From Octopus sinensis (taxonomy: Eukaryota), in assembly GCF_006345805.1 (NCBI RefSeq), contig NW_021832383.1, positions 1 through 64,000 of the forward strand: a DNA stretch of 64,000 bases. The letters run 5' to 3'. Positions 37,567 through 43,347 of this stretch are shown piece after piece (the stretch's first letter is position 1; every line of letters starts with the position of its first letter). The notes below the pieces were generated by a model, which saw only the letters and a program-made list of their open reading frames with translations, was not told the origin of the DNA and did no database searches. The translations under genes were made by a program, and so were the position numbers.

Positions 37567-37613
37567 AACACAACGTTTCGGCTGATATACCCTCCACCCT
37601 TCATCGGGTGTCT
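37567..37613 (-). ncRNA. Minimal type I hammerhead in the tail of a tRNA-headed element
   Basis: GACAC-CCGATGA-A-GGGTG(GAGGGTATAT)CAGCC-GAAAC-GTT-GTGTT; palindromic AACGTT; the sister copy at 38031-38070 has the perfect stem II GGCTG/CAGCC. Confidence 0.7.
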
Positions 37614-37693: not shown

Positions 37694-37868
37694 CATTTAG
37701 CGTCCGCTTTCCATGCTAGCATGGGTTGGACGGTTCAACTGGGGTCTGTGAAGCCAGAAGGCTGCATCAGGCCCAGTCTGATCTGGCAGTGTTTCTACGG
37801 CTGGATGCCCTTCCTAACGCCAACCACTCCGTGAGTGTAGTGGGTGCTCACTCACAGAGTGGTTGGCG
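37694..37868 (-). mobile_element. Family C SINE 3' part
   Basis: GGCGTTAGGAAGGGCATCCAGCCGTAGAAAC...CATGGAAAGCGGACG; inserted in an (AAT)n tract. Confidence 0.8.
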
Positions 37869-39557
37869 TTATTATTATTATTATTGTTGTTCAGGTCACT
37901 GCTTGGAATCGAACTCAGAATCTTGGGGTTAGTAGCCTGTGTTTTTAACCACTACGCCATATGCCCACAGGCATATGGCGTAGTGGCTAAGTGGCCATAT
38001 GGCATAGTGGTTAAGTGACCATATGGCGTAGTGAAGAAGGCTGGAGGGTATATCAGCCAAAACATTGTGTTAACAACAAACAAGATGAGGACAAATATTT
38101 GTCGATTGTAAATAATGTAAATAATTCCTCGTCTCTTAAATATAGAACTAACCGTTACTTGTTTCCCACAACACTTTTGAAAATCCAAAGCAAAGCAAAT
38201 GAAGCAAATGATTTATTGGCAGAAGTTCCACCAACTCCACCCTTTAATAATTGGGTGAGGAGTGGACGAGAGAATGTGACCAGAGGAGTTGATACAGGGT
38301 GGGTAGGGTAGGAAAGTTCACGAGGGCATGAAAGGGGGAGAGTGACAGGGACAGTGGTGAATGCAGGAGAGGGTGAACAACGAGTGGATGCATGGTCAAT
38401 GATGAATATTGGTTTGGCAGGGTGGAGGTGGGTGAAGGAAATAGAAGCGGGGGGGACAAGGAAGAGGAAAATGGGGGTGGGGAGTAAAAAGTATAATAAA
38501 ACTATTGGTAGATGGGAGCTAGGGAGATGAGGGGGTGAGGGAGGGATGCGCAGTGATAGAGAGGGGAGCTTAGAGAATCATCATCATCATCATCATCATC
38601 ATTTAAAGTCTGCTTTCCATGCTGGCATGGGTTGGATGATCTGAGAGGGACTGGTTAGGCGGAAGACTACACCAAGATCAGCTGCCTGTTTTCGTGTGGT
38701 TTCTAAGGATGGAAGCCCTTCCTGATGCCAAACACTTCAAAGAGTGTAACTGGGTCTTTTTCTTTTATGTGACACCAGCAGCGGTGAGGTCATTGAGTAA
38801 TTTGCAAGACAAGACCCTCTCAATTGGTGGTGGGGGGGGGAGAAGTATTGAGGGACAGAAGAGGGGTCTTGCATTAGAAGAGAAACATGGCTACCTCAAA
38901 TGCAGAGGGGGGGTGGAGAGGTTGTAAAGATGTAACAGTGAAGGGATCAGGAGCCGTACGCTCAAATTACAAGGAGGTGTATATAATGAAGTAGAAGAGA
39001 AAAATGGGGAAGATTACATGGGGAGGGGGCAGAGGTCAGCAGAAATTAGGGAGTGAGAAATGAAGGCAAGGGTGACAACCTATTAAAAGCTGGTATGAGA
39101 AGGTGTTTAGGGAAAAAGGGGTTTCAGCGGGAAATGAGATGGTAAGGGATGATACTGAAAGTGGGAGAGGGGACAAAATGAAGTGGTTTAAAGGAGAGAG
39201 ACATAATTGAGGGCATAGAAGGGAATCATTTAATTACAACAAGAGAGAGTAAGTGCCATAGAGAGGAGAGTGATGAATGTTCGGAAGACGAATTTTACAA
39301 TATGTGTAAAAATAATCAACATGCTTCAAGACTTCCAGCTCAGAAAAATTCCACCCGGAAGCATTCTTTCATTTATTTCCTGACTTTGTTTTTTTTCTGT
39401 TTTTTTTTTTATCCTTTGTGGAAAATCAATTTTTCACAATTAATGTGAAATTTTAAGTCCATCCAATAAACCATATATATATATATATATACCGGAGTAA
39501 ACACATAAATGTGAAACAAGGTGGAAAAAAGAGTACTCAAATACCAGGGGTAGAGTA

Positions 39558-39671
39558 ATATGCTTTATTCTAAAGCAGCAGAAATTCAACAAAAAGTGTC
39601 CGACGAACGGGAACGTGAAACTCAGAGTAACAGGTTTTGTTGAATTTCTGCTGCTTTTAAATAAAGTATAT
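39558..39671 (+). ncRNA. Type I hammerhead on a long stem I
   Basis: 23-bp perfect stem 39572-39594/39635-39657, extended by about 12 bp; TGT-CCGACGA-ACG(GGAA)CGT-GAAAC-TCAGA-GTA-ACA; predicted cut at 39629/39630. Confidence 0.8.
39564..39569 (-). terminator. Candidate AATAAA poly(A) signal of the TRF-like gene
   Basis: AATAAA on the minus strand about 270 nt after the stop, lying inside the arm of the HHR-bearing repeat. Confidence 0.3.
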
Positions 39672-39675
39672 ATAT

Positions 39676-39736
<61 letters not shown>

Positions 39737-39841
39737 GCACACATATATACATATATATATATAATCTGTCCTTCCTCCCTCACCAGCTGTTTGAGGAATC
39801 AACCAAGAAAGAAACAATAAAGGCACTCCCCAGCTCCCTAA

Positions 39842-40134
39842 TCACGAGGAAACGGGACCAAACTTAGCACTCAAGGCTTTCATCCTCCCCGTTTGTATGA
39901 AACTCCTCCATTTATCTTTCAGGTTAACGTTGCTCCGCTGTGTGCCCAAATAGTCTCGAATTTCAGCCCATTTACCAACTCCCATGAGCTTCACAGCCTC
40001 ATAGAACTCTTCTTCTTGTTCCTCTGTCCACAATTTTCGGTACATTTTGTCTCCGGATTTTTTCTTTGGCGATGGTCTGTATTTCAAACTTTTTCTCATT
40101 TTTAATGGTTGCAACTGTGGATATCTGTCGTTAA
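39842..40134 (-). CDS. TRF: TRF-like last exon with telobox Myb/SANT domain (KLWTEEQEEEFYEAVKLMGVGKWAEIRDYLGTQRSNVNLKDKWR)
   Basis: Telobox signature W-T-x-E...G-x-G-x-W...R-x2-V-x-LKDKWR; acceptor ttttattcacag phase 1; stop TGA at 39842-39844. Confidence 0.93.
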
Positions 40135-40293
40135 CTGTGAATAAAAAAATAACAAAAGACAATAAACTTTAGTAATACAGAATTGTCTGAGCATAAAACT
40201 GATCGTGAAATAGTATTTCATGGGTTGTCTAGAGCTTCAAATACAAAAGAAAACAATTTATCAAGATTTAACCGTTTAGCATTCAGATTACTT

Positions 40294-40743
40294 CCGTGCC
40301 GGTGGCACATAAAAAGTACCATCCGATCGTGGCCGTTGCCAGCCTTGCCTGGCCTCCGTGCCGGTGGCACGTAAAAAGCACCATCCGACCATGGCCGTTT
40401 GCCAGACTTATCTGGCACCTGTGCAGGTGGCACGTAAAAAGCACCATCCAATCGTGGCCGTTGCCAGCCTCGCCTGGCCTCCGTGCCAGCGGCACGTAAA
40501 AAGCACCATCCGACCGTGGCCGTTTGCCAGACTTGTCTGGCACCTGTGCAGGTGGCACGTAAAAAGCACCCACTACACTCATGGAGTGGTTGGCGTTAGG
40601 AAGGGCATCCAGCCGTAGAAACATTGCCAGATCAGGCTGGGCCTAGTGCAGCCTTCTGGCTTCCCAGACCCCAGTTGCACCGTCCAACCCATGCCAGCAT
40701 GGAAAGCAGACGCTAAACGATGATGATGATGATGATGATGATG
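40294..40743 (+). mobile_element. Family C SINE with five tandem ~62-nt head modules and a (GAT)n tail
   Basis: Units GTGCCGGTGGCACGTAAAAAGCACC repeated five times. Confidence 0.88.
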
Positions 40744-41094
40744 ATTACTCTCTCAAATGTAATCCTTATTTATTCACATTGATTTGAATTAATCCTGCAT
40801 TATCTCGTAGCTCTCAGACTTCAAAAATGTAATTGTTTACTTTTAGAATGACATTGTTGGGTAGGTGTGAGAAGCCAGATCTTGCCAGTTTGAACATAAA
40901 ATGGGTAGGAAATTGTGGGACGGATGATAAAGGGACTTTTTTTTCATTTATTTCTTTATCTGTTTAATAGCTTAGTTGCATCATGTCCGTATCATTACAT
41001 TGTTTCAATATAAATCCAGGAAACCTTAAAGACTTTTAAGTGTTTTTGCATTCAAAATTTTGTGAAATTTAGGTATTTAGGATTTTTTTGAGCG

Positions 41095-41400
41095 AGGTCG
41101 TTGCCAGTGCTGCTGGACTGACTCCTGTGCAGGTGGCACGTAAAAATCACCACTTGAGCATGGCCATTGCCAGTACTGCCTCACTGGTCCTCATGCCAGT
41201 GGCACGTAAAAGCACCCACTACACACTGCGAGTGGTTGGCGTTTAGGAAGGGCATCCAGCTGTAAAAACTCTGCCAGATCAGATTGGAATCTGGTGCAGC
41301 CATTTGGTTCGCCAGTCCCCAGTCAAAATCGTCCAACCCATGCTAGCATGGAAAGCGGATGTTAAATGACGATGATGATGACGATGATGATGATGATGAC

Positions 41401-41433
<33 letters not shown>
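41095..41433 (+). mobile_element. Family C SINE (two head modules)
   Basis: Sequence match; (GAT)n tail. Confidence 0.8.
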
Positions 41434-41579
41434 ATGGCCAGTTTAAATCCTAAGGGATCAACATACAGCATAATTCAAATAGTTCTGCCAACACAGAAGG
41501 AAACAAGTATTCATGGCAAGTCATCTGTTACCTTTGCAGAATTGACCTTATTCTGCAGGAAAAACACCTCAATCAGCCG

Positions 41580-41930
41580 GCTTGGTCAATCATATTTCCA
41601 CCCCTTTCATGTCTTGGTTAACCACATTTAGACCTCTTTCATACTTTGGTCTATCACATTTAGACATATAGCATACCTTGGTCTATCATATTCAGACCCT
41701 TTTCATGTCTTGGTTAACCACATTTAGACCTCTTTCATACTTTGGTCTATCACATTTAGACATATAGCATACCTTGGTCTATCATATTCAGACCCTTTTC
41801 ATGTCTTCGTCTGTCACATTCAGCCCTCCTCCATATCTTGATCTATCACATTTAAACTTCTTTTACACCCTGGTCTGTCTCGTTTACGTCTCTCCCATGA
41901 CTTGGTCTGTCAGATTTGCGACTCAACTAT
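41580..41930. repeat. ~96-bp tandem duplication built from TTGGTCTATCACATTTAGAC subrepeats
   Basis: Direct inspection. Confidence 0.75.
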
Positions 41931-43309: not shown

Positions 43310-43347
43310 CTGGAGACACCAGATCCTGGAGCGTCTTCTGAATATTT
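43310..43347 (-). CDS. TRF: TRF-like exon 10 (NIQKTLQDLVSP)
   Basis: Acceptor tgtgtatttgcag, donor CAG|GTATGC, 38 nt phase 2->1, in frame with the last exon. Confidence 0.65.

What the first reader, a model, noticed from the sequence alone, without database searches (positions are those of the whole stretch)
39490..39671. Hammerhead on a ~37-bp stem in the putative TRF 3' UTR, possibly donating the poly(A) signal
A ~180-bp element flanked by (TA)n carries a textbook HHR (GNRA-capped stem II, near-palindromic ACTC-A-GAGT stem III, GUA site) with a U4C core variant also seen at 37567. It is antisense to the TRF mRNA, so it would not cut the mRNA. The sense transcript would still form the long duplex (ADAR substrate), and the nearest AATAAA lies in its arm. 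An antisense transcript would be self-cleaved about 210 nt beyond the TRF stop.
Basis: partly seen in the sequence, partly recalled or inferred. Interest (0 to 1): 0.8.

Follow-up and report, generated by a model that had tools for sequence, protein, structure and literature searches.

The report
Ribozyme-like retroelement scar in a 3' UTR
The "hammerhead on a long stem" is one copy of a roughly 7,600-copy short mobile repeat that lands in TA microsatellites as two inverted partial copies; its ribozyme-like motif carries weakening changes, and it is an ordinary passenger in a gene's 3' UTR.

Summary
A 182-bp unit (39490-39671) lies between (TA)n tracts. It has a 37-bp inverted repeat around a three-way junction with 10 of 11 hammerhead core bases (C4 instead of U4) on the + strand. 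It is antisense to a spliced gene with a C-terminal Myb domain.

It is not a locus-specific device. The 5' arm occurs at least 7,613 times in the genome and the core about 8,400 times, and every copy examined abuts (TA)n. The usual form is a head-to-head inverted pair of short units. The centre varies between copies and a 68-nt tail sits on one side only. This is the published insertion signature of Penelope-like retroelements, which are abundant here and also end in (TA)n.

In the window copy one unit is truncated before its core. The surviving core therefore sits in the "loop", and the 37-bp stem is the junction of the two units.

C4 is the family consensus. Stem II closes with A-U, not G-C. 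No Rfam hammerhead model scores the motif, even in a copy with U4. Activity is unproven.

RNA contigs continue about 1.3 kb beyond the element towards a distal AATAAA, so the arm's AATAAA is at best a minor poly(A) site.

This scan has noted similar TA-anchored foldbacks elsewhere in this genome.

The parts
39473..39491 (.). (TA)n tract on the left of the insertion. It is either the target microsatellite or the element's own (TA)n end.
   Evidence: Read directly. All 32 full-length copies, and nearly all of the 63 sampled copies, abut (TA)n.
39490..39557 (-). One-sided 68-nt 'tail'. It is the 3' part of the left unit, which reads on the - strand.
   Evidence: It is present on one side only in the family. 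Core->arm->tail occurs 1,981 times and core->arm->(TA)n 1,661 times. The architecture is seen.
39558..39594 (-). Arm of the left unit. This unit is 5'-truncated before its own core. The arm forms one strand of the 37-bp duplex and contains the - strand AATAAA at 39569-39564.
   Evidence: Fold. In most family copies an antisense core follows this arm; here it is missing.
39596..39634 (+). Hammerhead-like three-way junction at the 5' end of the right unit. Proximal stem I is 39597-39599/39630-39632. The core CCGACGA is at 39600-39606, stem II with GGAA loop at 39607-39616, GAA at 39617-39619, helix III at 39620-39628, A17 at 39629.
   Evidence: It equals the family consensus except for C->G at 39596, which removes one stem I pair. 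No Rfam hit.
39635..39671 (+). Arm of the right unit, which has no tail. It is the other strand of the duplex and contains the + strand AATAAA at 39660-39665.
39668..39766 (.). (TA)n/(CA)n microsatellite on the right of the insertion.
   Evidence: The RNA contigs break here.
39842..40137 (-). Last coding exon of the host gene. It holds a single C-terminal Myb/telobox-like domain, with the stop codon at 39842-39844. It is spliced to an exon at about 43313.
   Evidence: PF00249 at 2.2e-10. PDB matches to c-Myb, Terfa, TRF1 and TRF2. mRNA contigs leave the genome at 40137 and resume at 43313.
38200..39495 (-). Probable distal 3' UTR beyond the element, with AATAAA at 38217-38212.
   Evidence: Contigs at 38611-39383 (plus about 110 nt more) in all four runs, and at 38300-38569 (one reaching about 38200) in the three runs of organism A. 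The non-repeat stretch 41382-41917 has zero depth. Sequence. The strand and the continuity with the exon are inferred.

Best explanation
Window 39490-39671 is a dead insertion of a short, non-coding, very abundant retroelement-like repeat in a (TA)n microsatellite. The microsatellite lies in the 3' UTR of a Myb/TRF-like gene.

The insertion has the layout typical of Penelope-like elements (PLEs). Two copies of a unit sit head to head, each truncated at a different 5' point, and an extra tail (68 nt here) is present on one side only. Each complete unit begins with a hammerhead-like three-way junction.

In this copy the left unit lost its junction through 5' truncation. The right unit's junction is therefore unpaired, and it is flanked by the two 37-nt arms, which mimic a long stem I.

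The motif is most likely a hammerhead by descent. It has C4 instead of U4 and A10.1-U11.1 instead of G-C, both in the family consensus. It is probably weak or inactive, and not needed for the family's spread.

At this locus the element is a passenger. The host mRNA reads through it, which puts a 35-40-bp duplex into the 3' UTR, and mostly ends farther downstream.

Shown: family membership, architecture, consensus state, spliced host mRNA, and transcription beyond the element.
Inferred: mobilisation by a PLE enzyme, descent from a real hammerhead, low activity, and read-through as one transcript.
For: Copy number:
- At least 1,286 first-look candidates, and 40 scored full-length matches at 88-100% identity.
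- 7,613 matches to a 33-nt piece of the 5' arm; 0 in the reversed-pattern control.
- 3,581 plus 4,850 matches to the two core variants; 0 in the controls.

Flanks: every one of 32 copies is flanked by (TA)n.

Architecture, from 63 copies sampled through the 5' arm, irrespective of the core:
- 17 are tail + arm + antisense core + centre + sense core + arm.
- 15 have the antisense core only.
- 9 have lost both cores.
- The centre differs from copy to copy and the two sides break at different points.
- The tail is one-sided.

PLE context:
- More than 5,000 GIY-YIG candidates.
- An ORF with RVT_1 plus a C-terminal GIY-YIG domain.
- The PLE copies checked end in (TA)n, and many have inverted partial copies upstream.
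- 3 of 30 PLE loci carry this element in the (TA)n after their 3' end, where about 0.1-0.3 would be expected.

Published signature:
- Inverted 5'-truncated copies, a one-sided tail and (TA)n targets (PMC8557442).
- The enzyme extends both DNA strands and has two RT start sites, which explains the tail. Hammerhead cleavage is not needed in vitro (PMC11167929).
- PLE hammerheads have a small palindromic helix III and low activity (PMC4209133).

Core state:
- C4 in 86 of 100 and 98 of 100 listed cores.
- T4 (10%) is as frequent as C7->T7 at the neighbouring CpG, so T4 is decay and not the ancestral state.

RNA.
Against: - No sequence homology was found between the unit and the 3' ends of the 30 PLE loci sampled. 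The autonomous partner is therefore unidentified.
- The tail is 68 nt, longer than the 30-40 nt published.
- Tailed and untailed ends are almost equally frequent (1,981 vs 1,661), which a DNA foldback element would also give.
- (TA)n hides any target-site duplication.
- The variable centres could also come from deletions in an unstable palindrome after insertion.
- The hammerhead-like motif fails every Rfam model, and a relaxed descriptor gives 0.07 chance hits per 64 kb. Descent from a true hammerhead rests on the local 10-bp stem I in each arm plus the PLE context.
Confidence: 0.68

Rival explanations
1. It is a foldback DNA transposon or MITE-like palindromic repeat that targets TA, and the hammerhead-like string is a coincidence. 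The centres vary because long palindromes suffer deletions.
For: - Long near-perfect palindromes of up to about 415 bp exist (L129).
- Tailed and untailed ends are about equally common.
- Deletions fall between short direct repeats (AACAAAAC), as in the window-type junction.
- Rfam hammerhead models miss the motif even with U4.
- The relaxed descriptor gives 0.07 chance hits per window, which means thousands per genome.
- Subfamily B, the larger one, has an A.G mismatch where stem II should close.
Against: - The two termini are not inverted repeats of each other, because the tail is one-sided.
- Forms with both tails are rare: 2 of the 30 best full-length matches, 0 of the 60 loci sampled through the 5' arm.
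- Left and right units break at different points.
- No transposase is associated.
- Each arm holds its own local three-way junction with a 10-bp stem I, a GNRA-capped stem II in both subfamilies (GGAA, GCAA) and 10 of 11 core bases. The global palindrome does not require any of this.
Confidence: 0.2
2. One reading: an active hammerhead, folded on a dedicated long stem, that self-cleaves antisense transcripts. Its arm supplies the main poly(A) signal of the TRF-like mRNA.
For: - The hammerhead fold is within about 1 kcal/mol of the MFE in this deleted copy.
- A U4C variant keeps enough activity in vivo for viroid infectivity (PMC3088659).
- AATAAA lies in the arm on the mRNA strand.
- The far-side contigs have 10-50% of the depth of the exon contig. 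Contig depths are a poor measure.
Against: - The stem is an insertion joint.
- The core deviates at two conserved places, and this copy lost a further stem I pair (C->G at 39596).
- There is no evidence for a + strand transcript.
- Transcription continues to about 38200 next to a distal AATAAA, while the non-repeat intron stretch is silent.
Confidence: 0.1

Closest known systems
Penelope-like element (PLE) insertions and their hammerhead motifs (Cervera & de la Pena 2014, PMC4209133; Craig et al. 2021, PMC8557442; Frangieh et al. 2024, PMC11167929)
   Same: - (TA)n target.
- Head-to-head inverted, 5'-truncated copies.
- An extension ('tail') on one side only.
- A type I hammerhead-like motif with a short, near-palindromic helix III.
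- Very high copy number, and many solo or inverted motifs 100-700 bp apart.
   Different: - No RT/EN gene, and no demonstrated homology to the terminal repeat of a PLE.
- Tail of 68 nt instead of 30-40 nt.
- Core with C4, and A-U (or A.G) in place of G10.1-C11.1.
- Stem II of 3 bp, against the 6-8 bp typical of PLE min-hammerheads.
Metazoan non-LTR retrozymes (Cervera & de la Pena 2020, PMC7229834; Li et al. 2026, bioRxiv 10.64898/2026.07.22.740005)
   Same: Short (170-400 nt), non-coding units that carry a hammerhead and are thought to be non-autonomous derivatives of PLE terminal repeats.
   Different: Retrozymes are direct tandem arrays that give circular RNAs. Here direct tandems are rare (2 of 60 sampled loci) and the rule is an inverted pair. 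Circular RNA was not tested.
Natural U4C hammerhead variant in a viroid (cited in Perreault et al. 2011, PMC3088659)
   Same: The same core substitution. It is described there as considerably lowering activity in vitro while still allowing function in vivo.
   Different: In the viroid it is a variant of an otherwise canonical, selected ribozyme. Here C4 is fixed in a repeat family that also lacks G10.1-C11.1.
Foldback/MITE DNA transposons with a TA target
   Same: Palindromic structure, small size, TA context, and many internally deleted copies.
   Different: The termini are asymmetric and no terminal inverted repeat reaches both ends. No transposase partner was found.

Membership tests
Hammerhead ribozyme (Rfam RF00163 and related models) | Invariant core C3 U4 G5 A6 N7 G8 A9 / G12 A13 A14 / A15.1-U16.1 / H17 | tested here: not met
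   10 of 11 positions match. Position 4 is C in this copy and in 86% and 98% of listed cores of the two subfamilies.
Hammerhead ribozyme (Rfam RF00163 and related models) | Three helices around the core with junction strands of 7, 3 and 1 nt | tested here: met
   The descriptor finds the site. The hammerhead structure scores -47.0 against an MFE of -48.1 kcal/mol.
Hammerhead ribozyme (Rfam RF00163 and related models) | G10.1-C11.1 pair closing helix II (highly conserved, also in PLE hammerheads, PMC4209133) | tested here: not met
   A-U in subfamily A and A.G in subfamily B.
Hammerhead ribozyme (Rfam RF00163 and related models) | Score with a curated covariance model | tested here: not met
   No hammerhead family at the gathering score, or at E<=10 on 4.5 kb or 71 nt. 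None for copies with U4 either. The same RF00163 model finds canonical hammerheads elsewhere in this genome at 34-48 bits.
Hammerhead ribozyme (Rfam RF00163 and related models) | Site-specific self-cleavage | not testable with these tools
   Only assembled contigs were available, and they cannot show RNA ends.
Penelope-like element insertion (non-autonomous derivative) | Inverted, 5'-truncated partner copy joined head to head | tested here: met
   17 of 63 sampled copies carry an antisense and a sense core. The centres are variable and asymmetric.
Penelope-like element insertion (non-autonomous derivative) | 'Tail' extension at one end only | tested here: met
   The 68-nt tail is on one side only in nearly all copies examined. 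It is longer than the published 30-40 nt.
Penelope-like element insertion (non-autonomous derivative) | Microsatellite (TA)n target shared with resident PLEs | tested here: met
   Element flanks. The RVT_1 + GIY-YIG elements of this genome end in (TA)n.
Penelope-like element insertion (non-autonomous derivative) | Sequence homology of the unit to the terminal repeat of an autonomous PLE | tested here: inconclusive
   No homology to the 30 PLE loci in hand beyond adjacent independent insertions. Further loci could not be fetched.
Metazoan retrozyme | Direct tandem repeats giving unit-length circular RNA | tested here: not met
   Direct tandems at only 2 of 60 sampled loci. Circular RNA was not testable.
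MITE / foldback DNA transposon | Terminal inverted repeats at both ends plus a target-site duplication | tested here: not met
   The two termini differ. A duplication cannot be read inside (TA)n.
TRF (telomeric repeat-binding factor) host gene | C-terminal telobox Myb domain plus a TRFH dimerisation domain | tested here: inconclusive
   The Myb domain is found. PF08558 (TRF) gives no match in the genome, but that search found nothing in any control genome either.

The most novel reading that the evidence does not exclude
The C4 / A10.1-U11.1 hammerhead, fixed in about 8,400 cores of two successive subfamilies, is a working natural core variant. It would cleave (perhaps as a dimer through its near-palindromic helix III) in solo or truncated copies such as this one, where no antisense core locks it up. 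Deleted copies in UTRs would then become conditional RNA-cleaving or dsRNA/ADAR elements.
Probability: 0.15. Interest if true: 0.55.

Novelty: new member of a known kind. Interest (0 to 1): 0.25.

Why it matters
The main value is to prevent over-reading. A convincing "ribozyme on a long stem in a telomere-protein 3' UTR" turns out to be the joint of two inverted partial copies of a common repeat.

The family itself is a modestly useful example. It is very successful (about 7,600 copies), sits in (TA)n, and shows the Penelope-type insertion signature. Its hammerhead-like core has been fixed with U4C through two subfamily expansions. That fits published evidence that hammerhead cleavage is dispensable for spread of Penelope-like elements. 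It also gives a natural set of sequences for testing how far the hammerhead core tolerates change.

For the host gene the practical consequence is a 35-40-bp duplex and an extra AATAAA in a long 3' UTR. Both could matter for editing or for alternative polyadenylation, but neither effect is shown.

Tried and rejected
- Rfam at the gathering score on the whole window, and at E<=10 on 4.5 kb, 221 nt and 71 nt, including two copies with U4: no hammerhead hit.
- Second 'U4C hammerhead' at 37567: found neither by the descriptor nor by Rfam. By eye it lacks a proper helix III and cleavage site.
- Idea that C4 is a mutation of this copy: rejected, because it is the family consensus.
- Idea that U4 copies are ancestral: rejected. 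T4 is as frequent as CpG decay at the neighbouring C7, and rarer in the larger subfamily.
- Idea that the element is part of the PLE found next to it: rejected. Other copies of that PLE end in (TA)n without it.
- Looking for PLE genes beside canonical hammerhead loci: no long ORFs there.
- A by-eye U3-A8 hammerhead-like string in the PLE 3' region: not supported by Rfam.
Nothing matched among the loci in hand.
- Pfam TRF domain in the genome: no match, and the control was also blank.
- Reads: only contigs were available, so no strand, RNA ends, editing or poly(A) site could be read.
- My early MITE reading (105-bp terminal repeats, as in L017/L029): dropped once the sample anchored on the 5' arm showed such forms to be rare.

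Full report
**1. What is in the sequence**

Between two (TA)n tracts lies a 182-bp unit, window 39490-39671.
- Positions 39558-39594 and 39635-39671 are inverted repeats. They fold into a long duplex: -49.1 kcal/mol, z = -8.4, and none of 200 shuffles folds as well.
- Between them the + strand reads GUGU-CCGACGA-ACG-GGAA-CGU-GAA-ACUC-A-GAGU-A-ACAG. This is a three-way junction with the junction lengths of a hammerhead and 10 of its 11 conserved core bases. Position 4 is C.
- A simple three-helix descriptor finds this site and no other in the window. Dinucleotide shuffles give 0.07 hits per window.
- The hammerhead secondary structure is only about 1 kcal/mol above the minimum free energy.

The raw observation therefore holds. 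The 0.07 figure still means thousands of chance hits in a 2.7-Gb genome, so the motif alone proves little.

**2. Why it is not a textbook hammerhead**
- Helix II closes with A-U, whereas G10.1-C11.1 is highly conserved, also in PLE hammerheads (PMC4209133).
- No Rfam hammerhead model reports the site at the gathering score or at E<=10, even when only 71 nt are searched.
- Two family copies that happen to have U4 are missed as well.
- The same RF00163 model does find canonical hammerheads with a short palindromic helix III elsewhere in this genome, at 34-48 bits.

**3. It is a repeat**
- The 182 bp match at least 40 other places over their full length at 88-97% identity. One further match is a 100% identical 182 bp on another scaffold; the flanks there differ and look like the same locus with microsatellite indels.
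- A 33-nt piece of the 5' part occurs 7,613 times with up to 3 mismatches, and 0 times in the reversed control.
- The 27-nt core occurs 3,581 times in the window's form, subfamily A.
- A second form occurs 4,850 times: subfamily B, with CCGAUGA, a GCAA loop and A.G where helix II should close.
- All 32 full-length copies examined lie between (TA)n tracts.
- C4 is the consensus of both subfamilies: 86 of 100 and 98 of 100 listed cores. T4 (10%) is as frequent as the C7-to-T7 change at the neighbouring CpG, so U4 copies are decay products and not the ancestral state.

**4. The family's real architecture**

I sampled 60 loci (63 copies) through the 5' arm alone, so the sample is unbiased with respect to the core.
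- The commonest form (17 copies) is tail (68 nt) + arm (37 nt) + antisense core + short variable centre + sense core + arm (37 nt).
- 15 copies have only the antisense core. On the other strand each of these is a single unit of core + arm + tail.
- 9 copies have lost both cores.
- Longer copies extend the palindrome to about 415 bp.
- The centre differs from copy to copy, and the left and right halves break at different points.
- The 68-nt tail is on one side only. Core-arm-tail occurs 1,981 times and core-arm-(TA)n 1,661 times.

The basic unit is therefore (5') core - arm - [tail] (3'), usually inserted as a head-to-head inverted pair. In the window copy the left unit, which reads on the - strand, is truncated just before its core. 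The right unit keeps its core. The 37-bp 'stem I' is simply the two arms of the pair.

In complete pairs the core is locked against its complement. Forcing the hammerhead fold costs about 80 kcal/mol in L074.

**5. Which kind of mobile element**

This layout is the published signature of Penelope-like elements.
- Inverted 5'-truncated copies, an extension at one end, and (TA)n targets in some clades (PMC8557442).
- The enzyme nicks and extends both DNA strands and starts reverse transcription at two internal sites, which explains the tail. Hammerhead cleavage is not required in vitro (PMC11167929).

The genome is rich in such elements.
- More than 5,000 GIY-YIG candidates, with open frames of up to 883 codons.
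- One ORF has RVT_1 plus a C-terminal GIY-YIG domain.
- Copies of one family all end in (TA)n, and many have inverted partial copies upstream.
- Three of 30 PLE loci carry the present element in the (TA)n behind their 3' end, far more than its density predicts. Sister copies lack it, so these are separate insertions into a shared target.

I found no sequence homology between the unit and the PLE ends in hand. I could not fetch more loci. Mobilisation by a PLE is therefore inferred from the architecture and is not shown. A foldback DNA element remains a rival at about 0.2.

**6. Is the motif a hammerhead by descent?**

For:
- Each arm has its own local 10-bp stem I (AACAAAACUGU / ACAGGUUUUGUU). 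The global palindrome does not require it.
- Both subfamilies keep a GNRA loop on helix II.
- Helix III is short and near-palindromic, as in PLE hammerheads (PMC4209133).
- The context is PLE-like.

Against:
- C4.
- No G10.1-C11.1.
- No model score.
- The larger subfamily has a mismatch in helix II.

I put descent at about 0.75 and present activity at about 0.3. U4C is known to reduce activity strongly in vitro while still permitting function in a viroid (PMC3088659). This particular copy has also lost one stem I pair (C to G at 39596).

**7. Host gene and RNA**
- The - strand ORF 39842-40162 encodes a single C-terminal Myb domain: PF00249 at 2e-10, with PDB matches that include Terfa, TRF1 and TRF2.
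- In four runs, contigs of about 1.3 kb cover 39770-40137, leave the genome at 40137 and continue in sequence found at 43313. They are therefore spliced mRNA.
- The contigs run about 50 nt into the CA/TA repeat and stop there, as assemblies do at repeats.
- On the far side of the element, contigs cover 38611-39383 (and about 110 nt more) in all four runs. Contigs cover 38300-38569 in the three runs of organism A, and one of these reaches about 38200.
- The non-repeat stretch 41382-41917 has zero depth in every run, so these are not DNA reads.
- An AATAAA on the - strand lies at 38217-38212.

The simplest reading is a 3' UTR of about 1.6 kb that passes through the element. The AATAAA in the arm (39569-39564) would be at best a minor proximal signal. 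Contig depths drop 2- to 10-fold across the element, but such depths are unreliable. Strand, continuity, editing and RNA ends could not be read from contigs.

**8. Comparison and verdict**

This is a new member of a known kind: a PLE-type, hammerhead-bearing mini-repeat in a TA microsatellite. Earlier notes of this scan describe similar TA-anchored foldbacks elsewhere in the same genome, and they disagree on whether the hammerheads are credible. My own tests support the insertion architecture and leave the ribozyme doubtful.

The point about a duplex in the sense mRNA stands as an untested possibility.

Noticed in passing
L042:2680-2760 and L067:2540-2620 (3' region of a (TA)n-ending Penelope-like element): By eye, a string UUGAUAAG-GUUC...GAAC-CGAAAC-AUGU that would be a hammerhead with the known U3-A8 covariation. 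Rfam does not score it.
   Followed up: partly
L001 (another scaffold of the same genome, 12086-12267) vs window 39490-39671: The 182 bp are 100% identical on a second small scaffold. The flanks look like the same locus with microsatellite length differences, probably an alternative haplotype scaffold.
   Followed up: partly
window 40176-41381: The intron of the Myb gene holds repeats with extremely high summed contig depth in all four RNA runs (up to 10^4-10^5), so they are abundantly transcribed interspersed repeats. Their ORF-like translations recur within the stretch.
   Followed up: no
window 37812-37874: A perfect 23-bp-arm hairpin scores weakly as plant miRNA precursors on both strands (27 bits, far below the gathering score). 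It is probably part of a SINE-like repeat.
   Followed up: no
window 38470-38472: A>G plus an inserted G in the contigs of all three same-species RNA runs. This is most simply a strain difference from the assembly rather than editing.
   Followed up: no
L116 and L119 (chromosome-scale contig 3): Direct tandem pairs of the element, 270 and 407 bp apart, with identical internal deletions. These are local duplications or tandem insertions, the only retrozyme-like arrangement seen.
   Followed up: partly
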